A DNA stretch of 64,000 nucleotides from Pecten maximus (Eukaryota), in NCBI RefSeq assembly GCF_902652985.1, contig NC_047017.1, forward strand, positions 39,370,001 through 39,434,000, read 5' to 3'. Below, in pieces: positions 50,801-64,000 of this stretch (positions are counted from its first letter, which is position 1; the number at the start of each line of letters is the position of its first letter). The notes under the pieces were generated by a model. It saw only the letters and a list, made by a program, of their open reading frames with translations, had not been told where the DNA came from and did not search any database. The position numbers were made by a program, and so were the translations under genes.

Positions 50801-52482
50801 AGCTGTTTTAGACAGTTTGACATCATTCACTAATCACAAGAAAAATATGTATGTGAAATAGCCGCTTCTGCATACAGCCATAACCAGACATCATGTTAGT
50901 TGGCTCCATCCTTTGGGCTCGCAGGGGCATCTACATTCATGTACTGTCACTATTATAAGAATTAAAATTACTGTTCCTGCTAACGTCAGAACCGTTCGTA
51001 TTACTGTTTGATACAGTAGACTAGTGCATATTATCTCTACCTTATAGTAATTTCTTGCCATTCATATCATATCAGTGTGAGACATGTTTTTTTAAAGACA
51101 TTTCCCTGCCCCTATCGGTTTCCTTGTGTCCCTAGCTAGACTCTTGACAATGAAACTGAAAGGGTGAAACAATAAGCATACTTAATGTTTCCGACAATAC
51201 TGCAGTTCAACCGGCGAGAAATTTTGACAGGCGTCCCAGATCCCCTAATGCATTCTAAATGCAATCAGACTGACTAAGGTCTCATATATATCAAAGGTCC
51301 TATATGTTCTCGTCCTATTCATGATATTTGCATCCTCACTTTTTTGTTGTTGACAATGACCATATCATGCCATTATCTTCAACTTGTTGAAGTTGGTCTA
51401 CAATTTAGAAATATATGTGGTTATCATTCTCTTCAGTGTTCAGGGACTCTGGCTCCGTCGACATTGACGATTATATATGTCCTTGGGGGTCCTGACATAG
51501 AGGTGTAAAAAAGGATTTATTTACGGTGATATTTTTGTGTGTGCATGTATAAAGGCAATAACAAGCATATATATATGTTAAAGTGTGTGATGATGGCTTC
51601 AAAGGCTGCGAGTAAGCATTACACTTTGAATACTAAGTATCTGTCTCTAAAGACAATAAAAGGTAAAAAATACTATATAGCTTGTAATTATACCATAAAT
51701 ATGCTATACATTACTTAAACACATATATATTAAACACAAACGACTGAGACGAAGACCTATATATTAAAGAGATATCAATCAATTGGAAGAAAAATAGACA
51801 ATAAATATGAAACAAATAAATAAGTAGTTTGGAATAAATAAATAATAATCTTTATAAGTAATTTATATCAGCATAGATGTAGAAATATAATTCCTTAAAC
51901 TTACTCCGTGTATGGCACAAAGGACATAATTTACTCCTTGGAAAAAAATTGATGTCTGCCTGGTTCAAATCCAAATAAGAAGTATGAAAAGGAAGAAAGA
52001 ATTAGACAGCGCACATTATGTAAAGGGCTCATTTTCTAAAGCTTTAAGCTTTTAAGGCTGTTCCTGGATCATGCTGGAAAGGGAAATGACTGATGAATGT
52101 CAATTGATGCTTAAATGTGTGGCTGTACGTACTACAAAGAGCAAAAAGTAGGCTCAAAGTGTTGTAGAACCTTTTATCATAATTACTATCCAACCTCAAG
52201 CATAATGTCGGGTGATAGAACAACAGGTGCATGGTCATTTAATTAACTTAAATTAACATGATGCAAATATTCTGGCTTTCGATTTTCTAAAACTGTAGCC
52301 TTTTCTAGCTACAACCTACATGTATCCTAAAAAAAGGAGTTGTGGACTACAAGGTTCATCAATGAGACCGGGCAAATTATTTCTAAGGCCACAATTCGCT
52401 GCCAAAAAACTTTGGGAAATTTCTTTTTTTTTTTGTCATCAAGATGGAAATGAATGAAGGTTTTTAATTTTTTTTTCCAGAA

Positions 52483-52505
52483 ATGATGGAGGAAGAAACA
52501 GAAAG
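52483..52505 (+). CDS. KNL1: KNL1 first coding exon (MMEEETE)
   Basis: ttttttccag|AAATGATG...GAAAG|gtaaga; phase 2 matches the next exon. Confidence 0.65.
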
Positions 52506-55500
52506 GTAAGACAGTTTTGCTGGAACCCTTTTCAATATTACTAAATTAAATATAGGTTAGCATTAAGTTACATAGCTATCTGCTGATGACTTATTTAGGT
52601 TAAATAAATATCCATACAAGAGCTGAAAATGCAATTTAAATTTTAGCCATTAACAGATATTATAGAACAATATTTATTTACAGAACTTGGAAAGAAATAC
52701 ACAGTCCCCCCACTATAAACCAATTTTGGGGAGGGGGGTGTTAATTTGTCAAGTGTCTCAGTTCTGTAAATAAATGAAATTTTCAGCTTCTCAAAAAACA
52801 GAATTAATATTAAATTTACATAAAAACCATCCATGACAGTTAAAACATAAATCCAAAATAGTATGATTGCTATGTTTGGCATATCAATATTACTCTAGAT
52901 TATTAATATGATAAATATCAGGGAATAATAACCTGTAATTCACAGAATTGCTAAATATAAATCATGGACATTGGTGATGAAATAGCAGAGGTTTTCAAGG
53001 AGTTTATTTGATCTGGCTTATGTGCACAATATAGTCTTTTGAATCTGTTGTTAACTTGCATATGAAATCTTGCTGAAATGTCATTGTTTTTTTATTGCAG
53101 ACTTACATTAAACTTGAATTCCAAGAGGAGGTCTAAAAGGAGATCCTCATCTGTGAGTACATGTATATGAAGTTTGGGAACCATGTCTATAAAATATTGG
53201 TGTGTATCCACTGACATTTGCAGATTGAAGAGTGCTGATTTATTAGCTCACACTGCCCTAAGGGCCGGTGAGCTTATGTGGCACATTGTCTGTTGTCCTC
53301 CATCCAGCATCCGTCAACATTTCATTTAAATCCCTATTAGTTCTGAACACCTGAATGGATTTTGATGAAATTTGGTCTGGAGCATCATTGGGCAAAGAAA
53401 ATCTAACATTGTATAAACGGAAATAAAATAGAGAAAATTGAAGTAAATACAAATCCTACCAGTCCTGAACGCTTGCATGGTTTTTCATGAAATTTGGTCA
53501 GGACCATTATATTGAGCTAATGTACATGTCAAATAACTGAAGGATGTGGCACTCTTGGGGCTGGAGAAAATGAGACTAATAGGGGAAATAATGCAACAAA
53601 AATACTTTAAAAATCCCTTTTTCTTTTCAAAGAATGACAGGATTTGGTTCACCTGTAGTTTGAACCGTTGTTGGGAGAGGCAGTTCAAAAGTAGGAAAAT
53701 ATTTAAAATTTAACTTAAGTTTGAGTATTTTCCCGTAATTACTGATATATCTGGGTATTCTGGGCCTCTTCTTTCTCAATATGATTTATTAAGCACATAC
53801 GTACTAAGACATTGTGGTATCATGACAATGAGTTACTTTCACATTGATAAACTATTTGCCTTGCTCCTCAACAACAGCAAAAAAGAGATGTAGGAAGGGA
53901 TGAAACCTGTGGCTGCAAATGTAAAACATTATTGTGATAGGTGAAAGGGAAAACAATTCTTTATATATTCTTTGATTCACAAGGAGCTCACCACGGTAGA
54001 AAACTACAAAATGTGTGTTGGAAAAGCTCATTAAAGTTTAATTTAAACTAAGGTGGGAGCCCATAATTAGATAATGGTCTGTCTGTGTAATTACTGTTTT
54101 GATGACATGTTTTGTGGGTTTTTCTTTTGTCTATACCTAGTAAAGTGTCCTTCTCCCCCTAACTCTCCACTTTTATACACTCACAAATACACCCCTTTCT
54201 ATATATCTGGTAAAAGGAAAAATTATTAAATAGATACACCTGTAAACAAATTAAAAAGAACACTTCCTGTAACCAGTAACATATCAACATCACTGAAAAA
54301 TTGACAAATACACAAAACACAATAATTAACAGTATGACATATTTGTAATATTATTTATAAGGTGTCGTTTTTTGTGTTTAGAATACCTATTTATGTCCCA
54401 TTCATGATCAATTTATGTTAAAAAAAATCTTCACCCTTTCAGATTTTGAAGACAACGATAGGACCATTATTGGACATTGATCCTAATAAACAGGTAAGAC
54501 GTCGACACATTTGACCAGATATAATGATTTTTGGCTCACATGGTACAATGAGTCATTAGGTCTTTCAGTTGTTTTGACAGTTTTTATTTCTTTATAACTT
54601 CAAGTTGCCTTTCACATATGCCAAAATTTCAGGTTTGAAACTATAAATAGGCATATCCTTAGTTAAAGAGAGTATTATTAATTTTGTTCCAATTAATGTG
54701 CTCGAGTCTGAAAATAATGTAAATTATTATATTGAATTATTTCTCATCAAGAGATCAAATTAAAGTATTAAAATTGCATGGGAAGAAAATAAATGGTAAT
54801 AAAATGGAAATATTCTTGTTTACCTGTCAGGATGGATGCAATGTTCCACTCAAGAAATCTAGACCATCATTATCAAAAAGAGTCAGCTTTGCTAGACTCC
54901 TTGAAGTCAAGTAAGTTGTTCAAAGAGTACACAACAATAGTGCTTTTAAAGTTTCAAATTATTAAGGGACCTATTACTACCTACACCTTAATATAAAAAT
55001 TCACAAGTCTATGCTTGGGCTTGGATCATACTTTTACACATTAAGTCATATATGTCATGTTTAACCCAAGTTATCAATTTCTGCATATATTAATCTTGCA
55101 TGAAATTATTTCTTCAAACCTATATAAAATGATGACTTCTCTCAATTTAGTCACACTCAATTCTCCCTCATACAGATCCCCCACTTATGTTTAAGGGCAA
55201 AATCTTGTTTCCTAAAATGTACTTCCATATACTTTACTGAAGTACTTTACTTTACTGCAGAATGTGCCTGGAACTGGCCTGGCTCAAAGACTAACAAAAA
55301 AAAAAACCCAACTAAAATGTGCTTTAAATTTGATGATGATCACATCAGGGCATTCAGTAGACCCTTGGGAGCATGTTTTTGTCTTTTTGATTTCCAAATA
55401 TTCAGATTTGGATTTTGGGATTGAAGGGAAATATTTTGTCTTTCAGATTTCTAAGAAATGGTGATTTGACTTATGAAGTTGCTTAAAGTCAAGTGTCAGC

Positions 55501-58500
55501 TGGATGCATTGAACATACAAATGTATATAAAAATTGCTTTTATGATGCAATTACAATATAAATATCAAATTTATACATATACCTGATACAATAACAATAT
55601 AGAGATCAAATTTATAGATATACCTGATACAATTACAATATATCAAATTTAAATGGGGCAAAGAAGTAATTCAAACAGTGTGGACAATGAGGCTTGTTAA
55701 ATTTTCGAGGCAATCCGCCCCTTTATCAAAACACAAAAAATACAAATACAATCACATAATATATATAAGATGTACTGGAAATACAATAAAATACAATAAG
55801 AATAATGTTTAAGTAACTGGAGAAACAACAATGAACCCTTCGGCAAACGTGGGCCGAAGGCGGATACTAGCGTGACTGTATCATGTTCAACACAATGCGA
55901 CCAACGGCAGAGATATTTTGAATTCTCCCGCACGTGAAAGTATATCGAAGAGTTCAAAGACGATTCGTCCCTAAAAACTTACAGAATAGGTAAGTAAAAA
56001 ATTAGTGGACGACATTGCGTTGATATCAGATTTCAGAATAAAAGTGTTGCATTATCGTCTCTACAGTGATTGATTAAATATCGTGTACAAAGTCTGAAAA
56101 ACTTTTGAAAAATATCTTTTAGATAATTAGAATTATAGAGAGTGGTGTGAAAAAAACTACTACGAATATTTATCAAGACTGAGAATATAAGAAATACGAA
56201 TGCCGAAGTGTCCCTACAGGACGCTATGGGAAACAGACGGTTCGGGCCAAATCGGACCAAGATGCTGTTGATGGCGGGAGGCGACTAAATGTGAGTCTCA
56301 AAGAGCAACAATGAATTGATGCCCAAAATTACAGCAATTATGAAAATTTTAATAAATTGAATAATTAACTACATGAATTGTCAAATATAATGGTCACATG
56401 GAGAATACACCCAGAAGAGGTCCTTCAACGTTCGTTCATACCCCGAGGGTAGCAGGTTTGGAGATTGGTAATCCAGTATCTTTCTCTGGAACGACGCTTC
56501 GTTTCATTCCAGGTAGGACAGTGATCAATGACGACCACCTGCATATCCTTCCAACTATGACTAGGTAAATTGAAATGCCTTGCCACAGGAAAGTCTGGTC
56601 TGTTTTGCTTGATGGAGTAACAGTGATTGTTGATTCTGATGTTGAGCTTTGTGCTGGTTTCTCCAACATACTGCATTTTGCATTTTTTGCAGGAGAGGAG
56701 ATATACAACATTGGCTGATGTGCTTGTCAGTGTTTGTAAAATGTGATAAACACGGTTGTTTATTTCACATTTTAACGTGTCTGTGGACTCAGTGTATGGG
56801 CAAAATTTGCACATTTTTTTTGCTGCATGTGTTGAAGGAGCCTGTTGTAACGACAGAGGCAGATGAATGTAATTTGCTGCTCACCACCAGATCTCTTACG
56901 TTTTTTGGTCTACGATAGGCCAATAACGGTGGTTCTGGAAAGATCCGTTTGAGTGTAGCTGACGACTCAATGATGCGCCAATGATTATGTAAAATGGAAG
57001 AAATTGACGGCAAGTTAGGATGGAACGTGACCCACAAGGGACCCTTTGTGTCGGAGTTCTGACTTTGTATTCAAGAAGGCTGGCTCTGTCAAGTACCCTG
57101 ACTTTGTCTAGTTCCTGATCTATCAAAGTAGATTTATATCCTCTAGCAAGAAGGTGTGATTTAAGTTCTGAGCATCGATGTTCGAAGACTATCATCGGAC
57201 ACTATCCGTCAGATACGTAGAGCTTGGGAATAGGGAATGCTCTTCGTTGTATGCGAGGGATGACAGCTGGACGGGCGGAGATACTGGTACGTGTCCGTTG
57301 GTTTGGAATAGAGGTCTGTGTTTATTTTTCCGTCAAGTAAGGTTGAACTGGTTCAAAGACGATTCGTCCCTAAATACTTACAGAATAGGTAAGTAAAAAA
57401 TTAGTGGACGACATTGCTCTCTAAAAATTATTGGACGACAGTACTCTTCGATATACTTTCACGTGCGGGGTAATTCAAAATATCTCTGCCGTTGGTCGCA
57501 TAGTGTTCTAGTGTTGAACATGATACAGTCACGCTAGTATCCGCCTTCGGCCCATGTTTGCCGAAGGGTTCATTGTTGTTTCTCCAGTTACTAAAACATT
57601 ATTCTTATTGTATTTTATTGTATTTCCAGTACTTCTTATATATATTATGTGATTGTATTTGTATTTTTTGTTTTTTTTATAAAGGGGTGGATTGCCTTGA
57701 AAATTTAACAAGCCTCATTGTCAACACTGTTTGAATTACTTCTTTGCCCCATATAATCATTACAAGTAATTCGTATCCTCCATACATTTATGTGATGTTC
57801 CAGTGTTTTCTGGATTATACTGTTTATATTACTTCTTTGACCCATATCAAATTTATAGATAACCTGATACAATTACAATATAGAGATCAAATTTATAAAT
57901 ATACCTGATACAATTACAATATATCAAATTTATAGATATACCCGATACAATTACAATATAGATATCAAATTTATAGATATACCTGATACAATTACAATAC
58001 ATAAATCAAATTTATAAATATACCTAATAATTATGCACTCATATTTAGTTGTTGAAATAACAAGATGTCTTAATATGTTTCTTGACACCACGTAATTGTG
58101 TAATTGGTCCGAGGTATATTTCGGTTGTCTTCATAATATTTGTCACAAACTACTGCAGATCCAACTCCAAGCATTGTATACATGTTATAAATTCAAATGC
58201 CTCATCTTTAACTATCAGCAGGGCATTTCAGTATTGTTCTGGTGCTGTGAGGCATTGTATTCTTTTAATTATAACAGTGTTTACTTATATTTGATATATA
58301 TACATATATACAGCGCATGCATGTATTTATAAATATGCATTGTGCTTTTTCTCTGTTATTTTTCAGAGAATTCCCACGAGACTCGCCACGTAGGTGTGAG
58401 GATTCTCCAGGTACTGTATGAACTTTATACATTGTGATAAAATATTCTTGTTTGCTACCAGAAACAAATTAGTTGCAGTATCTTTCAATAAACCTCTACT

Positions 58501-61500
58501 CTATTTACTTAAATTGCATAAAAGAAACTGGTTAATTTGATTATCCCTCAACTTCACTTAGCTGTCTTTTAGTCTTGTGTGTTAGTCTGATAACTAAAAC
58601 ATTCTTGCTGAACTTAAAGCACATTGTAGTTGCCAAGTGACATCAGAGGTGGGCAGAGCTTGTTACTGAATTCACTGTCTTTTGCCAAGCAAGGCGGCAG
58701 GTTGACAGAGCTTGTTACTGATCCTGCCTGCTATGGGTAGACAACAGTTTATTCTTTCTTTTTGGCGCTGTCATGGTTTTCTGAAACAAATAAAAGGTAG
58801 TCCAAAAGATACTGGAGAGCACAAAATCATTGAAGGCATCCATTGTCGTTATGGGATAAAATAGACCAGATTGATAGATGTCAGGTTAATAATTACAATC
58901 AAATATTACGAAAATTTTATGCTCAGAATGGGGATGTGCATTATTGTATATCCAAGTCTGGCATTATGTTACAAAATCACTTATTCGGACATGAAACTGG
59001 AGTATCATCAATGGCAGATTATTTTGCCAATTCAAATTTCCGGTCATGCAGTTACTCTTGTGAAATTTTTAAAGTGAAATATAGTCACCACATAGCCTGT
59101 ATATTTCATTTCAGTCAGGTTGCATTGGTTTCATTGCCATCTCAATGACTGGACACAGGTATAAAGACTGTGTTTAACAAATAAAAATATCTCTCTGGTC
59201 TGCATGATAAAATGGTTAAAGGGTTGAGGATATATAGCAAGCTTCTGGTTTCCCTCGACCATGCCTATTTCCCTCGGCTTCACCTTGAGAAATAGACCTG
59301 GTCTCACGGAAGCTAACTATATCCCTCAACTTAAACAGTATAATAATCTAATAAATAGCAACCATTCTAAATATACTAACAGGTATAGATGTATAGGTAT
59401 GTTAAACACAGTAATTTTTCTCAAACTATATTACTGAATCATCTAGCAAAGAAATAAATATCCATAGCTACTATTCTTTGCTATGACTTTCCTATAAAAG
59501 AAGGTTTTGATGGTGTGCTAAATAACCTCATGGTAATACCCTTGACATGGTCAAAGTGGTAACTTGTCATTTAAATGATACGAATATAATGTAAATACAA
59601 ATTTTTCAATACAATATGTGTACAATTTTCAGATCATTTCATCCTAAGGTTTGTATGTAGAGGAACTATAATGATTAGATATCCTGTGTTTATGTAATAA
59701 AGTTCTGTTCCTTTATTCAACAGCACAAGAACCAGCAACAGACACAGGGTATGTTCTTATTGTAAAACGGATATTTTTTTCCAGTTTATCCACACTGACA
59801 ACAATAAGCAGTTAATACAATGTATTAACTGATATGATGTGTTATTGTCAGATGTATGTACAGCTAAAAAACATTTTGATATCAGTTCACATTTTTTCAT
59901 ATCATTGAAATTGGAAATGTCAAGAGAAAAAAAAGTATTTTATCGTGAAAAATCAGGTAACAAGTTCGTCTCATTCTGAAAATGGTTGTTCCGCCTGGTT
60001 TATAGAGCTGTGACAAAATTTGAAAAATTTGTAAAGTGAAAATAGGAAGAAGCAATGAAAAATTACCTGCCCTCCCTAGTGCTTAAACTGGTGATTTCTA
60101 ACTGCTCTGTCAATTACTGGACTTGAGGGAAATTTCTACAAGCCAGAGCTTGTAAGGTGACTTACACCAGAATTTAAACAAAACTATGGAAATTATGAAT
60201 GGGCCATGCTATCCTAATTTGTGCTTTGATGTTCTTTTTCTATTTCCTGCTTCAGAAATGACACAGTACCTTTGACAAATCCAGTTACAATTCAGCAAGA
60301 TCAGCATGGTAACTTTTGTCCTTATTTTCATTCATTTTGTGTAGATTTATAATATATCAAAGTACATTATACAAGGTATACCAGGTATTTGAAAAGGTAG
60401 TAAATAAACTGGTTAATACCTAATTATATTATTAAGAATTAAGTTTATGAATATTAGATGAGAAGTTTCCTAAACTATAGGTCATGATCATTACTATGTA
60501 CTTATCATGAAGTTATTTCAGTTCACCTTGTTAACTGTAATAATATGGAGCAAGTTGAGAAGTTGAATATTAAGAACATAATGAAAGTCACCAGATAAAA
60601 CAAAGATTAAATTTCTAGTAAACATGTTAATATTTCGAAACCCGAAATTTTCAGAGGCACCAACAGAGTTCAAGTTAAACTTGCATCTTTTTCTTTTCTC
60701 TTTTTGTTTTTTTTTACTTTATAATAATTTGTTTTTATTTATTTGTTTTTTTCAGTGACAAATGTCTCGGAAGGTCAGCTTGAAGGGTAAGAGAAACATG
60801 ATTCTTCCCACTAGGCTTTATACATATGATAATGCATCAGTGATATGAAAGAAATGATTTTATCCTGGTATGAATCATAATCAGAGCTTCTGATTTTCTG
60901 AGTTCCTTGAATACCACATTATAAAAGGTAGACAATGTCGATCTATTGGAGTTAGTGATGGGATAGCAATCAGCTATAAGTGACTAATTACTCTTTTAAC
61001 ATCAACTAATAGATGCGATTATTGATTATAATTTTTCATAACCTTTGATGTACTTGGTTTCCTGTTTTTTTTTTTATAAAACTCATTCCATAGCCTACAT
61101 AGAGTGCATTATAATGTTATTTGGCAGCAAATTAGAGATTAGGGAAGCATTTTTGGTTTGTTAAAGTAAAACATGACTGCAACAGAAAATGCAAAATTAC
61201 ATCTATGGGTTTATTGGGTTTGAAATGAATTGATTATGTTCTTGGGTGTATGTGATACACCCCATCCCCATGTTTTCTGAAACAGCCCTAACTTTACTAT
61301 AGCTTTATCAGTGTAGTGAAGGTACAACACATATATAGATACTATGCTTCAAAATAACTGATTCAGTGATATAAAGTTCCCATGTGATTAATTTTTGTGA
61401 TGATTGCATATAAGAAGAATTGTTAAAAATAACAACAAAAAATTGAAAATCTGTGTTTACATTTTCTTTCAGTTCTCGGATGCCTCTGCTGCCAAGTATG

Positions 61501-64000
61501 TCTGCCCCTCATACAGAGAATGATTTTGATAAATACTCACAGCACTTGAATCCATTAATTCCAGCCATGGTTGAGACTTCTGGGATTGCTGGCACTGCTG
61601 TCAGCTCCAGACAACCACAGATATGGAGACAGGAGTCTAAGATTGATGGCAGTTCATTACTGAAATCAATTACAGGAACAGGTACGCAACCTAGAGAAGG
61701 AATGGAATTGGGGTACCACACACAATCTAGTGAGACCTCTAGCCTAGTATCTAAAGCTGCTGGCAGTGATACAAAAGTTGATGGCATGGCCTTGTTACAA
61801 GCTCTTGGTGGTGGGGCTTCAAACACTTCTGCTGAGCCAGAACTACTGCCATCTTACAGTGTCGGGGATAATCCCAAAGAACAGTCAGTTCAAAATACAA
61901 GGGCCATGATGTTTTCAGAAAGCAGGTACATGGACCAAACCAAAGCACTCACATGTCACACTCAGCTACGGGAGGCAGAAGCTTGTCTGAAAGGTTTAAG
62001 AGAGCGCACTCCACTGATGGCACTGAAGGACCAGGCTGTTGATAATGTTCGTTACGGAGTACTGAATGATGACCCAGGTGACAAGACGATTGTGTTTACT
62101 CAAGGGGATGATATGCAGCAGACAGAAGTGCTGCCAGTCGGATTACAATTAAACTCCCAACCTTCTGACGGGGAGGTTTCTTGTCTGTCTGGACATGTCA
62201 ACAGACAGAGCCTTCTACGGTCCTTAGGCGGATCTGATGAAACTGACAGCCCTGAGGTATTATTTGCAAAGAAGTTTGAAACATCAAATTCAAATATTGA
62301 GAGACCACCATTCAAGGGATATGATACAACACATCAGAGAGAGGCGACCATTGTGTTTCAACAAGGACTGGAAATGGAGGAAACAGGAGTTATACATGCC
62401 CAAATTGATAGACAAGATGAGTTTTTGTGTGCAAATACATCTGACAATGGAAAAGTGCAATTTTACCTTGGGAGTGACTCGGAGGAAATACAATCTGCAG
62501 ACATGCCAATGTACAGACCAGTGGAACAAAAAACTGTCAACAAAACATTGATTTATCAAGATGGTGCAGACATGGAACAAACTGAAGTACTGGATAGTAA
62601 TATAAACCACAGATCGCTGGCACAACCTCCTATCAACCAAACGATGATACAGGGGGCAGACATGGATCAAACTGAAGTACTGGATAGTAAAATAAACCAC
62701 AGATCGCTGACACAACCTCCTATCAACCAAACACTGATACAGGGGGCAGACATGGATCAAACTGAAGTACTGGATAGTAAAATAAACCACAGATCGCTGA
62801 CACAACCTCCTATCAACCAAACGCTGACACAGGGGGTATCCATGAAACAAACAGGAGTTATATCCAACAATATTTTATCAAACACATCAACTTTCCAAAG
62901 GTCAGATAGCAAAACTCTAATATTTCAAGATGGCGCCGATATGGAACAAACAGGAGTCATATCCAACAATATTTTATCAAATACATCAACTCTCCAAAGG
63001 TCAGATAGCAAAACTCTGATATTTCAAGATGGTGCCGATATGGAACAAACAGGAGTCATATCCAACAATATTTTATCAAATACATCAACTCTCCAAAGGT
63101 CAGATAGCAAAACTCTGATATTTCAAGATGGTGCCGATATGGAACAAACAGGAGTCATATCCAACAATATTTTATCAAATACATCAACTCTCCAAAGGTC
63201 AGATAGCAAAACTCTGATATTTCAAGATGGCGCCGACATGGAACAAACAGGAGTCATATCCAACAATATTTTATCAAATACATCAACTCTCCAATGGTCC
63301 GATAGCAAAACTCTAATATTTCAAGATGGCGCAGACATGGAAGAAACTGGAGTCATTGATACTAAATTTATTAACCGATCATTGGTACGACCAGTCAACC
63401 AAACCGTGATGGATGGGGCTGCCATGGAAGAGACTGGTGTCATTGATGCTAAAATTACCAACCGATCATTGGTACGACCAGCCAACCAAACCGTGATGGA
63501 TGGGGCTGCCATGGAAGAGACTGGTGTCATTGATACTAAGATTACCAACCGATCATTGGTACGACCAGTCAACCAAACCATAATGGATGGGGCTGCCATG
63601 GAAGAGACTGGTGTCATTGATACTAAATTTATTAACCGATCATTGGTACGACCAGTCAACCAAACCGTAATGGATGGGGCTACCATGGAAGAGACTGGAG
63701 TCATTGATACAAAAATTACCAACCGATCATTGGTACGACCAGCCAACCAAACCGTGATGGATGGGGCTGCCATGGAAGAGACTGGTGTCATTGATACTAA
63801 ATTTATTAACCGATCATTGGTACGACCAGCCAACCAAACCGTGATGGATGGGGCTGCCATGGAAGAGACTGGTGTCATTGATACAAAAATTACCAACAGA
63901 TCATTGGTACGACCAGCCAACCAAACTGTGATGGATGGGGCTGCCATGGAAGAGACTGGTGTCATTGATACAAAAATTACCAACAGATCATTGGTACGAC
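52483..64000 (+). CDS. KNL1: KNL1/Spc105/CASC5 kinetochore scaffold, 5' part (runs off the window end)
   Basis: Exons 52483-52505, 53101-53152, 54443-54493, 54831-54910, 58367-58410, 59724-59748, 60256-60308, 60756-60786 and 61473->64000 splice GT-AG with continuous phase. They give MMEEETERLTLNLNSKRRSKRRSSSILK...SKRVSFARLLEVKEF...: SILK and RVSF PP1-docking motifs, KI-like motifs, and TxxF/Y + MELT-like repeats. Confidence 0.88.
53101..53152 (+). CDS. KNL1: KNL1 exon (LTLNLNSKRRSKRRSSS)
   Basis: ttattgcag| ... TCT|gtgagt; supplies the S of SILK. Confidence 0.85.
53238..53771. mobile_element. non-autonomous Helentron (HINE)-like element
   Basis: TTTATTAGCTCAC...GCCC-TAA-GGGC...GTGAGCTT hairpin end, then a (C/T)GTC-like microsatellite, repeated ATGAAATTTGGTC units and a TGGGCCTCTT end; layout typical of bivalve HINEs (recognised from family knowledge). 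Confidence 0.6.
54443..54493 (+). CDS. KNL1: KNL1 exon (ILKTTIGPLLDIDPNKQ)
   Basis: ctttcag|ATTTTGAAG...CAG|gtaaga; completes SILK. Confidence 0.85.
54831..54910 (+). CDS. KNL1: KNL1 exon with RVSF motif
   Basis: ctgtcag|...KRVSFARLLEV...|gtaagt. Confidence 0.9.
55652..57845 (-). mobile_element. 5'-truncated, degenerate Penelope-like retroelement (RT C-terminus + Cys-rich linker + GIY-YIG endonuclease; Neptune-like) with inverted terminal repeats
   Basis: Minus strand 57350-56425 reads TDLYSKPTDTYQYLRPSSCHP...LLARGY...AYRRPKNVRDLVV...CKFC...VVYLLSCKKCKMQYVGET...RERYWITNLQTCYPRGMN, with a stop and frameshifts. 55653-55953 is inverted at 57443-57752, and 55952-56018 is repeated directly at 57351-57417. 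Confidence 0.92.
55695..55733 (-). ncRNA. minimal type I hammerhead-ribozyme-like motif (U3-A8 variant) in the Penelope terminal repeat
   Basis: Minus strand UGUU-UUGAUAA-A-GGGGC(GGAUU)GCCUC-GAA-AAUU-U-AACA: stem I UGUU/AACA, 5-bp stem II, palindromic AAUU stem III. Degenerate copy on + strand at ~57672-57710. Confidence 0.6.
58367..58410 (+). CDS. KNL1: KNL1 exon (EFPRDSPRRCEDSP)
   Basis: tttttcag| ... CAG|gtactg; gives VKEF after RVSF. Confidence 0.75.
59724..60786 (+). CDS. KNL1: KNL1 small exons 59724-59748, 60256-60308 and 60756-60786
   Basis: Each is GT-AG bounded. Phases run 1-2, 2-1, 1-2 and link exon 58367-58410 to the large exon without stops. Low-complexity peptide, so less certain. 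Confidence 0.6.
61473..64000 (+). CDS. KNL1: KNL1 large exon with KI-like motifs and MELT-like repeat array
   Basis: ttttctttcag| acceptor; stop-free frame of >840 codons to the window end; M-x-x-T motifs preceded by T-x-x-F/Y (e.g. DSKTLIFQDGADMEQT). Confidence 0.9.
62572..64000 (+). repeat. coding tandem repeats in KNL1: 90 bp x3, 99 bp x5, 87 bp x7 or more
   Basis: Motif ATGs at 62572/62662/62752/62842 (period 90), 62941/63040/63139/63238/63337 (period 99), 63424/63511/63598/63685/63772/63859/63946 (period 87). Confidence 0.95.

What the first reader, a model, noticed from the sequence alone, without database searches (positions are those of the whole stretch)
52483..64000. Hidden KNL1 kinetochore scaffold gene not shown by the ORF track
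Seen: eight exons of 23-80 nt splice in phase to give RRSSS|ILK (SILK split by an intron) and KRVSFARLLEVKEF, followed by a >840-codon open exon. The track missed the large exon because it has no stop inside the window, and reported antisense shadows instead. Known: N-terminal SILK + RVSF (PP1 docking, Aurora B regulated) followed by MELT repeats is the diagnostic KNL1/Spc105 architecture, and the protein diverges fast enough to be often left unannotated.
Basis: partly seen in the sequence, partly recalled or inferred. Interest (0 to 1): 0.75.

Follow-up and report, generated by a model that had tools for sequence, protein, structure and literature searches.

The report
Scallop KNL1 kinetochore scaffold gene

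Summary
Observation confirmed, interpretation supported. Eight GT-AG exons (23, 52, 51, 80, 44, 25, 53 and 31 nt, window 52483-60786) splice in phase into a 3,554-nt exon starting at 61473. That exon stays open for 842 codons to the window end and ends 1,026 nt beyond it. SILK straddles the exon 2/3 junction and RVSF lies in exon 4. A database protein predicted on the same contig (P0001, 1,883 aa, 22 coding exons) is exactly this model.

Contigs of three runs (kind on record only as a guess at RNA) join exons 5 to 9 at these sites, and their overhang reads the RVSF-coding end of exon 4. Pfam MELT and Spc7 pass their cut-offs. The Knl1_RWD_C HMM misses, but the predicted C-terminus superposes on the human KNL1 tandem RWD domain (Z 18.7; next unrelated 8.5). 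Proteins found with the C-terminus alone include records named KNL1, CASC5 and Spc7-like, and 12 of 20 carry N-terminal SILK and RVSF.

So this is a pectinid KNL1 orthologue, single-copy as far as tested, hidden only from a prokaryote-style ORF track. Its relatives are mostly labelled "uncharacterized". Mildly notable: all 23 repeats read ME[EQ]T-like rather than MELT, a shift shared with an oyster, and arrays are homogenised species by species. Both patterns are already described for KNL1. The exon 1-4 junctions were not checked against run data.

The parts
52483..52505 (+). Coding exon 1 (23 nt), start codon ATG at 52483; encodes MMEEETE plus 2 nt of the next codon
   Evidence: Read. P0001 residues 1-8 map here. 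GT donor at 52506. There is an in-frame TAA at 52465-52467 upstream. Not checked against run data.
53101..53152 (+). Coding exon 2 (52 nt): basic patch KRRSKRR and the SSS that ends with the S of SILK (53150-53152)
   Evidence: AG acceptor at 53099-53100 and GT donor at 53153-53154. Identity to the Mizuhopecten orthologue is 16/17 and to the Argopecten orthologue 13/17.
54443..54493 (+). Coding exon 3 (51 nt): begins with ILK (54443-54451), which completes SILK across intron 2
   Evidence: Identity to the two other scallops is 17/17 and 15/17. A SILK-type motif is found in 12 of 20 proteins that were retrieved by the C-terminus alone.
54831..54910 (+). Coding exon 4 (80 nt): RVSF at 54879-54890, followed by ARLLEV and 2 nt of the K codon
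   Evidence: The overhang of contigs from X1, X2 and X6 just upstream of exon 5 reads the 3' end of this exon, RVSF codons included (table 7).
58367..58410 (+). Coding exon 5 (44 nt)
   Evidence: The joint 58410/59724 is GT..AG in the contigs of X1, X2 and X6 (table 5).
59724..59748 (+). Coding exon 6 (25 nt)
   Evidence: The joints on both sides are present in X1, X2 and X6.
60256..60308 (+). Coding exon 7 (53 nt)
   Evidence: This joint is therefore not in table 5.
60756..60786 (+). Coding exon 8 (31 nt)
   Evidence: The joint 60786/61473 is GT..AG in X1, X2 and X6.
61473..64000 (+). Window part of coding exon 9. The whole exon is 3,554 nt and ends at extended coordinate 65026. It encodes the disordered middle region with the MELT-like repeat array.
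   Evidence: Open frame. Pfam MELT PF19221 scores 47.6 bits against a cut-off of 30. Contigs of 4 of 4 runs lie on it. It is the only locus in the genome by DNA and by protein search.
62113..64000 (+). MELT-like units. 18 of the protein's 23 units start inside the window: three singletons, then tandem blocks of 90 nt (62566-62836, 3.0 copies), 99 nt (62842-63356, 5.2 copies) and 87 nt (63325-64000, 7.8 copies in the window, continuing beyond it).
   Evidence: The motifs are MQQT, MEET, MEQT, MDQT and MKQT; none is MELT. TxxF/Y lies upstream of 7 of the 20 M[ED]x[TS] motifs.

Best explanation
Window 52483-64000 holds the 5' two thirds of the KNL1 (Spc105/Spc7/CASC5) orthologue of a pectinid scallop. 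The gene has 22 coding exons and an 1,883-aa product, and it ends about 16.6 kb beyond the window.

Shown here: the exon structure; splicing of exons 4 to 9 in contigs of public runs; the N-terminal basic patch with SILK at residues 25-28 and RVSF at 59-62; 23 MELT-like units in one large exon; an Spc7-type helical region; and a C-terminal tandem RWD fold.

Inferred from what is established for KNL1 in human, yeast and worm, and not tested here: the SILK/RVSF pair docks PP1. The threonine of each ME[EQ]T unit is phosphorylated by MPS1 to recruit BUB3-BUB1 for the spindle checkpoint, and the docked PP1 reverses that. The coiled coil and RWD domains fix the protein to the Mis12 complex (Nsl1) and to Zwint at the outer kinetochore.
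For: - **Gene model.** Database protein P0001 (1,883 aa, on a contig of 53,454,838 bases, the length of C3) is 100% identical to exon 9. All its residues map onto the window plus L007-L008 as 22 GT-AG exons.
- **Expression and splicing.** One contig in each of X1, X2 and X6 (three studies) carries exons 5 to 9 joined, with an overhang that reads exon 4. X10, on record as RNA, covers parts of exon 9.
- **Domains.** MELT scores 49.8 bits (cut-off 30) and Spc7 35.4 bits (cut-off 34.5) at residues 1434-1585.
- **RWD.** The best PDB sequence hits of the C-terminal profile are 4NFA_A and 4NF9_A, 'Protein CASC5', at E 0.002. The model has mean pLDDT 81.5. The Foldseek top 5 are all human KNL1/KMN entries, E 1e-11 to 4.7e-9 and TM (target) 0.63-0.76. 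VIA-align gives Z 18.7, 18.2, 17.3 and 15.9, with the next chain at 8.5; model residues 279-481 align to human 2105-2311.
- **Orthology.** A C-terminus-only profile found 21 proteins at E <= 0.001 among 1.84 billion. Of the 20 looked up, 5 clusters hold a record named KNL1, CASC5, kinetochore scaffold 1, spc7-like or Knl1 RWD-containing. Twelve of the 20 have SILK/GILK plus RVSF in their first 200 residues.
- **Copy number.** There is one locus in the genome by DNA search and by protein search with the first 362 codons of exon 9.
- **Family criteria.** The criteria that Tromer et al. 2015 used to accept KNL1 orthologues (SILK/RVSF, MELT-like repeats, RWD, coiled coil; passage seen) are all met.
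Against: - The Pfam Knl1_RWD_C model (PF18210) finds nothing, either in the genome or in P0001-P0003 at E <= 1.
- Spc7 passes its cut-off by under 1 bit here and fails in the two orthologues (30.0 and 21.8 bits). MELT also falls below its cut-off in them (26.1 and 17.5 bits).
- No unit is a canonical MELT: 0 of 20 M[ED]x[TS] motifs has a hydrophobic third residue.
- Junctions E1/E2, E2/E3 and E3/E4, including the one that creates SILK, were not seen in run data. Only 30 letters of the overhang are shown.
- X1, X2 and X6 are labelled 'RNA?' (a guess), and contigs cannot show strand or level.
- Exon 4 alone finds no KNL1 peptide in the PDB; the best hit is a ribosomal protein at E 0.72.
- 8 of 20 C-terminal relatives lack the N-terminal motifs by my regular expressions. 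Six of these are short or partial records, and two are full-size (P0009, P0019).
- No function was assayed.
Confidence: 0.94

Rival explanations
1. It is a repeat-rich mucin-like or other low-complexity protein that only happens to contain MELT-like and RVSF-like strings, not a kinetochore protein.
For: NCBI names four amphioxus records of a related cluster 'mucin-22-like'. A weak Extensin_1 match at E 0.048-0.12 overlaps the repeats. 15 of 20 related clusters have no functional name.
Against: The same amphioxus cluster also holds a record named KNL1. The C-terminus folds as the KNL1 tandem RWD with Z 18.7 against 8.5 for the next family. The Spc7 and MELT models pass their cut-offs. The N-terminal SILK/RVSF pair recurs in 12 of 20 proteins that were found by the C-terminus alone.
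Confidence: 0.01
2. The gene is KNL1, but exons 1-3 are not part of the main transcript. The real 5' end would lie elsewhere, so the SILK made by splicing would be an artefact of gene prediction.
For: The junctions E1/E2, E2/E3 and E3/E4 were not observed in run data here (one search covered 58300-62560 only). P0001-P0003 are computer predictions.
Against: The X1 contig has 308 letters upstream of its exon-5 piece. Exons 1-4 need about 202 of them, and the 30 shown are exon 4. Exons 1-3 are 7/8, 16/17 and 17/17 identical to Mizuhopecten and 6/8, 13/17 and 15/17 identical to Argopecten. SILK lies 25-48 residues before RVSF in the 12 of 20 distant relatives that have both, and that spacing needs these exons. 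All the sites are GT-AG and in phase.
Confidence: 0.04
3. It is a decaying or silent duplicate of KNL1, and the working copy lies elsewhere.
For: The repeats are unusual (no canonical MELT). One unit has lost its threonine (MEEI at residue 1061).
Against: No frame break occurs in any of the 22 exons. Spliced contigs come from three studies. There is only one locus in the genome by DNA and by protein search. The same non-canonical motif is kept in two other scallops and an oyster.
Confidence: 0.01

Closest known systems
Human KNL1 (CASC5); C-terminal structures 4NF9, 4NFA, 8PPR and 8Q5H
   Same: Same order of parts: N-terminal SILK then RVSF, a long disordered array of MELT-type units (some preceded by TxxF/Y), a coiled coil, and a C-terminal tandem RWD. 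The RWD model superposes on human residues 2105-2311 with Z 18.7, rmsd 2.6 A and 23% identity.
   Different: Sequence identity is only about 20-23% even in the RWD, and the Pfam RWD_C model does not fire. The repeats read ME[EQ]T rather than MELT/MDLT-type. I saw no SHT-type motif in the units printed; Tromer et al. call that motif vertebrate-specific (passage). KI motifs were not looked for. The positions of the human N-terminal motifs were not checked here.
Mizuhopecten yessoensis LOC110457786 isoform X2 (P0002) and the Argopecten irradians protein (P0003), both named 'uncharacterized protein'
   Same: Direct orthologues with the same N-terminus, the same first three repeat units and the same C-terminus (82% and 79% identity over the last 490 residues). 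The motif type is ME[EQ]T in both.
   Different: Each species has multiplied a different unit: 29-, 30- and 33-residue units here, mostly a 30-residue MEQT unit in Mizuhopecten, and a 29-residue MEET unit in Argopecten. 50 of 62 units have their nearest unit in the same species.
Fungal Spc105/Spc7 (Pfam PF08317)
   Same: The Spc7 model matches residues 1434-1585 above its cut-off. MELT-type phospho-docking units and an RVSF-type PP1 site are the family's hallmarks (passages of PMC4558858).
   Different: The match is marginal (35.4 against 34.5 bits). The array is longer and recently homogenised. Fungal proteins did not appear among the 21 profile hits.
Rapidly reorganised KNL1 repeat arrays of drosophilids and vertebrates (Tromer et al. 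2015, PMC4558858)
   Same: Block multiplication, species-specific homogenisation and consensus switching. The paper names 'MELT to MSLT/MEET' as a recurrent parallel change (passage).
   Different: Its main text mentions no mollusc: 0 occurrences of Lottia, Crassostrea, mollus- or lophotrochozoa-.

Membership tests
KNL1 / Spc105 / Spc7 / CASC5 | N-terminal [SG]ILK PP1-docking motif | tested here: met
   SILK lies at residues 25-28. The S is the last codon of exon 2 (53150-53152) and ILK is 54443-54451. It is conserved in both scallop orthologues and present in 12 of 20 C-terminus-retrieved relatives. The exon 2/3 joint itself was not seen in run data.
KNL1 / Spc105 / Spc7 / CASC5 | RVxF-type PP1-docking motif (RVSF) shortly after SILK | tested here: met
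   KRVSF lies at residues 58-62, with RVSF at window 54879-54890. The contig overhang in X1, X2 and X6 reads these codons joined to exon 5.
KNL1 / Spc105 / Spc7 / CASC5 | Array of MELT-like repeats in the disordered middle region | tested here: met
   Pfam PF19221 scores 47.6 bits on the window part of exon 9 and 49.8 bits on P0001, against a cut-off of 30. There are 23 units. Caveat: the motif is ME[EQ]T-like, with 0 of 20 having a hydrophobic third residue.
KNL1 / Spc105 / Spc7 / CASC5 | C-terminal coiled coil / Spc7 region | tested here: met
   PF08317 scores 35.4 bits against a cut-off of 34.5 at residues 1434-1585. One exon piece alone scores 15.9 bits. The model has long helices at residues 47-90, 107-190 and 197-280 of the 490-residue stretch. 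The HMM evidence is marginal.
KNL1 / Spc105 / Spc7 / CASC5 | C-terminal tandem RWD domain, by HMM (Pfam Knl1_RWD_C, PF18210) | tested here: not met
   There is no match in the genome at E <= 10 and none in P0001-P0003 at E <= 1. The genome search works exon by exon and the domain is split over six exons, so it had little power. The scan of whole proteins has no such excuse.
KNL1 / Spc105 / Spc7 / CASC5 | C-terminal tandem RWD domain, by profile and by fold | tested here: met
   The best PDB sequence hits of the profile are 4NFA_A and 4NF9_A at E 0.002. The Foldseek top 5 are human KNL1 entries at E 1e-11 to 4.7e-9. VIA-align gives Z 18.7 with 188 of 207 residues and rmsd 2.6 A, and the next family scores Z 8.5.
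KNL1 / Spc105 / Spc7 / CASC5 | Single orthologue per genome whose relatives are KNL1 | tested here: met
   There is one locus by DNA and by protein search (only the best candidates are scored). 5 of 20 related clusters hold a KNL1-type name. The other 15 are named uncharacterized or hypothetical, and the only other functional name is 'mucin-22-like' inside one of the 5.
KNL1 / Spc105 / Spc7 / CASC5 | Kinetochore localisation, PP1 binding, phospho-dependent BUB3-BUB1 recruitment | not testable with these tools
These functions are inferred from the family.

The most novel reading that the evidence does not exclude
Pteriomorph bivalves (three scallops and the oyster Saccostrea) have replaced the hydrophobic third residue of the BUB3-docking motif throughout the array, from ME[LMF]T to ME[EQ]T. 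The counts of hydrophobic third residues are 0/20, 1/19, 0/19 and 1/13 in these four. In gastropods they are 12/14, 15/19, 6/7 and 4/5, and in amphioxus 16/18.

If this is not neutral drift, bivalve BUB3-BUB1, or the kinase that writes the mark, may have co-adapted to an acidic or polar residue next to the phosphothreonine. That would be a natural re-specification of the checkpoint's docking code. In addition, only about a third of the units keep the TxxF/Y element, so two classes of unit may recruit BUB proteins differently.
Probability: 0.15. Interest if true: 0.45.

Novelty: new member of a known kind. Interest (0 to 1): 0.15.

Why it matters
The result gives a correct name and a full domain map to a scallop gene whose relatives are labelled "uncharacterized protein" in most invertebrate annotations (15 of 20 clusters looked up) and in one case "mucin-22-like". 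It shows that hand-splicing from raw sequence recovered a real gene that a prokaryote-style ORF track cannot show.

Biologically it is the expected essential kinetochore scaffold. The only added value is a further, clean example of species-specific KNL1 repeat homogenisation, together with a clade-wide MELT to ME[EQ]T switch in bivalves. That switch could serve as a natural test of how BUB3 reads the motif.

Tried and rejected
- **Genome-wide Pfam searches.** Knl1_RWD_C found nothing. Spc7 gave only sub-threshold coiled-coil hits on other contigs, best E 0.94. These exon-by-exon searches were too weak to find the domain.
- **Downstream open-frame pieces against Pfam.** Of nine pieces scanned, 7 were blank. 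One gave Spc7 at 15.9 bits together with DASH_Duo1 at 19.9 bits, both below their cut-offs, and one gave a chance-level DUF match.
- **Word-indexed protein searches.** Both found only the three scallop proteins. The exhaustive profile search was needed to reach other phyla.
- **Exon 4 against PDB sequences.** No KNL1 peptide was found. Exons 1-3 and 5-8 encode fewer than 20 residues and could not be searched singly.
- **Joined model.** The small exons were judged by mapping the database protein P0001 onto the DNA and by per-exon identity to P0002 and P0003.
- **Papers.** KNL1 with scallop gave 1 irrelevant paper. KNL1 with oyster gave 4 papers holding both terms, 3 of them listed, none on bivalve KNL1. 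KNL1 with a guessed species name gave 0. One badly built five-term query returned only shellfish papers. So I found no description of a bivalve KNL1 in the held library. Subscription papers and supplements were not searched.
- **How much of each paper I saw.** For PMC4558858 I saw the listing, the start of the abstract and passages by 'find'. All other papers were seen in listings only. Petrovic 2014 and Primorac 2013 were seen only as entries in its reference list.
- **Antisense ORFs as genes.** Rejected.
Full report
**What is there**

The window is G000:C3:39370001-39434000, plus strand, of a 918-Mb genome in 3,983 contigs. From 52483 onward the plus strand carries eight short exons of 23, 52, 51, 80, 44, 25, 53 and 31 nt. 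Each is bounded by AG and GT (read, mapped). Together with the first base of the next exon they make exactly 120 codons.

The ninth exon starts at 61473. Its frame is open for 842 codons to the end of the window. I fetched 30 kb of downstream DNA. The frame stays open for 1,204 codons in all, and a GT donor ends the exon at extended coordinate 65026.

The local stop-codon probability is 0.073, so 842 open codons have a chance of about 1e-28. The longest stop-free run elsewhere in the window is 227 codons.

The mechanical ORF list leaves the frame out, because ORFs that run off the source are not listed. It shows antisense ORFs inside it instead. Those have no credible family match. One gets a 29-bit summed score for Arcadin_1 with no stretch that passes on its own, which is what a repeat produces.

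**An existing gene model**

A search with exon 9 alone returned three proteins. P0001 is 1,883 aa, 100% identical, and was predicted on a contig of 53,454,838 bases, the length of C3. The other two are P0002 from Mizuhopecten yessoensis and P0003 from Argopecten irradians, both named "uncharacterized protein".

All of P0001 maps onto the window and loci L007-L008 as 22 coding exons, ending at extended coordinate 80634. The genome is therefore that of a pectinid scallop, and the gene was hidden only from the ORF track, not from eukaryotic gene prediction.

Only exon 4 and exon 9 are long enough to be searched singly. The small exons were judged through P0001 and through per-exon identity to the two other scallops: 7/8, 16/17, 17/17, 21/27, 12/14, 7/9, 7/17 and 7/11 to P0002.

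**Run data**

Twenty-four runs were listed for exon 9, and 18 of them hold part of it. I laid four runs from four studies on 58300-62560. X1, X2 and X6 each have one contig that carries exons 5, 6, 7, 8 and 9 joined.

Three of these joints are listed as GT..AG skips at exactly the predicted sites. The exon 7/8 joint is visible in the contig pieces but is not tabulated, because a T-rich repeat next to it was skipped. Upstream of exon 5 these contigs run on with letters that are the 3' end of exon 4, including the RVSF codons. In X1 that overhang is 308 letters long, enough for exons 1-4 (about 202 nt) plus a 5' untranslated part.

X10, the only run of the four on record as RNA, covers pieces of exon 9 only. 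X1, X2 and X6 are labelled RNA by guess. The spliced form itself, together with the absence of a second locus in the genome, argues that they are RNA.

**Domains and family**

- **MELT.** The Pfam MELT model scores 47.6 bits on the window part of exon 9 and 49.8 bits on P0001, against a cut-off of 30.
- **Spc7.** The model scores 35.4 bits against a cut-off of 34.5 at residues 1434-1585. It falls below the cut-off in the two orthologues.
- **Knl1_RWD_C.** This model finds nothing.
- **Sequence profile.** I aligned the last 490 residues of the three scallop proteins (A1). Against PDB sequences the two best hits are human KNL1 C-terminal chains, 4NFA_A and 4NF9_A ("Protein CASC5"), at E 0.002 over the second RWD half.
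- **Exhaustive search.** Against 1.84 billion representatives the profile finds 21 proteins at E <= 0.001, nearly all matched at their own C-terminus. Looked up by name, the 20 beyond Mizuhopecten come from a brachiopod, amphioxus, oyster, freshwater mussel, gastropods, hemichordates, echinoderms and cnidarians.
- **Names.** Five clusters hold a record called KNL1, Protein CASC5, Kinetochore scaffold 1, kinetochore protein spc7-like or Knl1 C-terminal RWD domain-containing protein. The other 15 are uncharacterized or hypothetical.
- **Independent N-terminal motifs.** Although these proteins were retrieved by the C-terminus alone, 12 of the 20 carry SILK (or GILK) and RVSF within their first 200 residues. 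Six of the eight without them are short or partial records.

**Structure**

With a 25-row alignment (A2), AlphaFold gave a model of mean pLDDT 81.5. It has three long helices followed by two alpha/beta modules.

The five best Foldseek matches are all human KNL1 or KMN-network entries: 8PPR chain K, 4NF9 chains B and A, 8Q5H chain K, and 4NFA. Their E-values run from 1e-11 to 4.7e-9, and the next hit is at 2.2e-3.

VIA-align gives Z 18.7 (rmsd 2.6 A, 188 of 207 residues, model 279-481 on human 2105-2311), then 18.2, 17.3 and 15.9.

**Mechanism**

The architecture is shown. The mechanism is inferred from the family (passages of PMC4558858):

- PP1 docks on SILK and RVSF at the N-terminus.
- The threonines of the repeats are phosphorylated to recruit BUB3-BUB1, and the docked PP1 removes the marks.
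- The coiled coil and RWD pair anchor the protein in the KMN network.

All four criteria that Tromer et al. used to accept KNL1 orthologues are met.

**The repeats**

The protein has 23 units, 18 of which start inside the window. Three singletons are orthologous across the scallops. They are followed by blocks of 30-, 33- and 29-residue units, corresponding to 90-, 99- and 87-nt periods with 96, 96 and 93% matches.

No unit is MELT. The motifs are MEET (12), MEQT (5) and MDQT (3), plus MQQT, MKQT, MAET and a decayed MEEI. Across 20 proteins compared, the hydrophobic third residue is nearly absent in the three scallops and the oyster (0/20, 1/19, 0/19, 1/13). It is the rule in gastropods, the brachiopod, amphioxus, the hemichordate and echinoderms, and in two of the three cnidarians; the coral has it in only 1 of 4.

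Fifty of 62 scallop units have their nearest unit in the same species, which indicates species-specific homogenisation. Both behaviours, including "MELT to MSLT/MEET" switches, are already described as recurrent in KNL1 (passage).

Two earlier notes of this scan on the same window say the same about the motif and the three blocks. My counts agree with them.

**Verdict**

This is an ordinary, intact and single-copy KNL1 orthologue, expressed as far as the contig evidence can show. Novelty is limited to naming a gene that annotation leaves unnamed, and to a bivalve-wide motif switch that may or may not be functional.

Noticed in passing
window 55649-57756 (intron 4 of the gene): A roughly 2.1-kb insert bounded by about 300-nt inverted repeats (arms 55649-55953 and 57443-57756, 91-98% complementary). 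On the minus strand it has an ORF (56425-56814) with a GIY-YIG catalytic domain (PF01541, 38.8 bits against a cut-off of 22.6). From memory, this looks like a truncated Penelope-like retroelement. It sits inside a 41-bp minisatellite (55543-55642 and 57846-58029).
   Followed up: partly
window 62113-64000 and P0002, P0003, P0028: ME[EQ]T replaces ME[LMF]T in the KNL1 repeats of three scallops and an oyster, but not in four gastropods, a brachiopod or the deuterostomes. Only 7 of the 20 M[ED]x[TS] motifs here keep an upstream TxxF/Y.
   Followed up: partly
window 52444-52467: A 7-codon upstream ORF (ATG to TAA) lies 16 nt before the start codon, and its stop is in frame with the main ORF. The X1 contig implies about 100 nt of 5' untranslated sequence. 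I could not see whether this stretch is in it.
   Followed up: no
window 62066, 62159, 62190, 61702: The contigs differ from the assembly. 62066 A>T appears in 4 of 4 runs and would turn an Asn codon (AAT) into Ile. 62159 A>G and 62190 T>C appear in the 3 runs that cover them. 61702 A>T appears in 2 of the 3 runs that cover it. The sequenced individual probably carries minority alleles.
   Followed up: no
window 59391-59657 and 58649-58783 (introns): Run X6 has a 272-letter contig inside intron 5 with 7 differences. Run X2 has a contig that touches intron 5 only in two short pieces. These could be unspliced RNA, DNA carry-over or a dispersed repeat.
   Followed up: no
P0005 cluster (amphioxus): One 90%-identity cluster holds a record named KNL1 and four RefSeq isoforms named 'mucin-22-like'. 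This is an example of repeat-driven misnaming of KNL1 orthologues.
   Followed up: no
extended coordinates 72400-75000 and 84100-93500 (L007-L009, beyond the window): Long tandem arrays lie in an intron of the gene and downstream of it. Their units give open frames in several phases, for example a 61-residue unit repeated from about 72742 to about 74378. They were not analysed.
   Followed up: no
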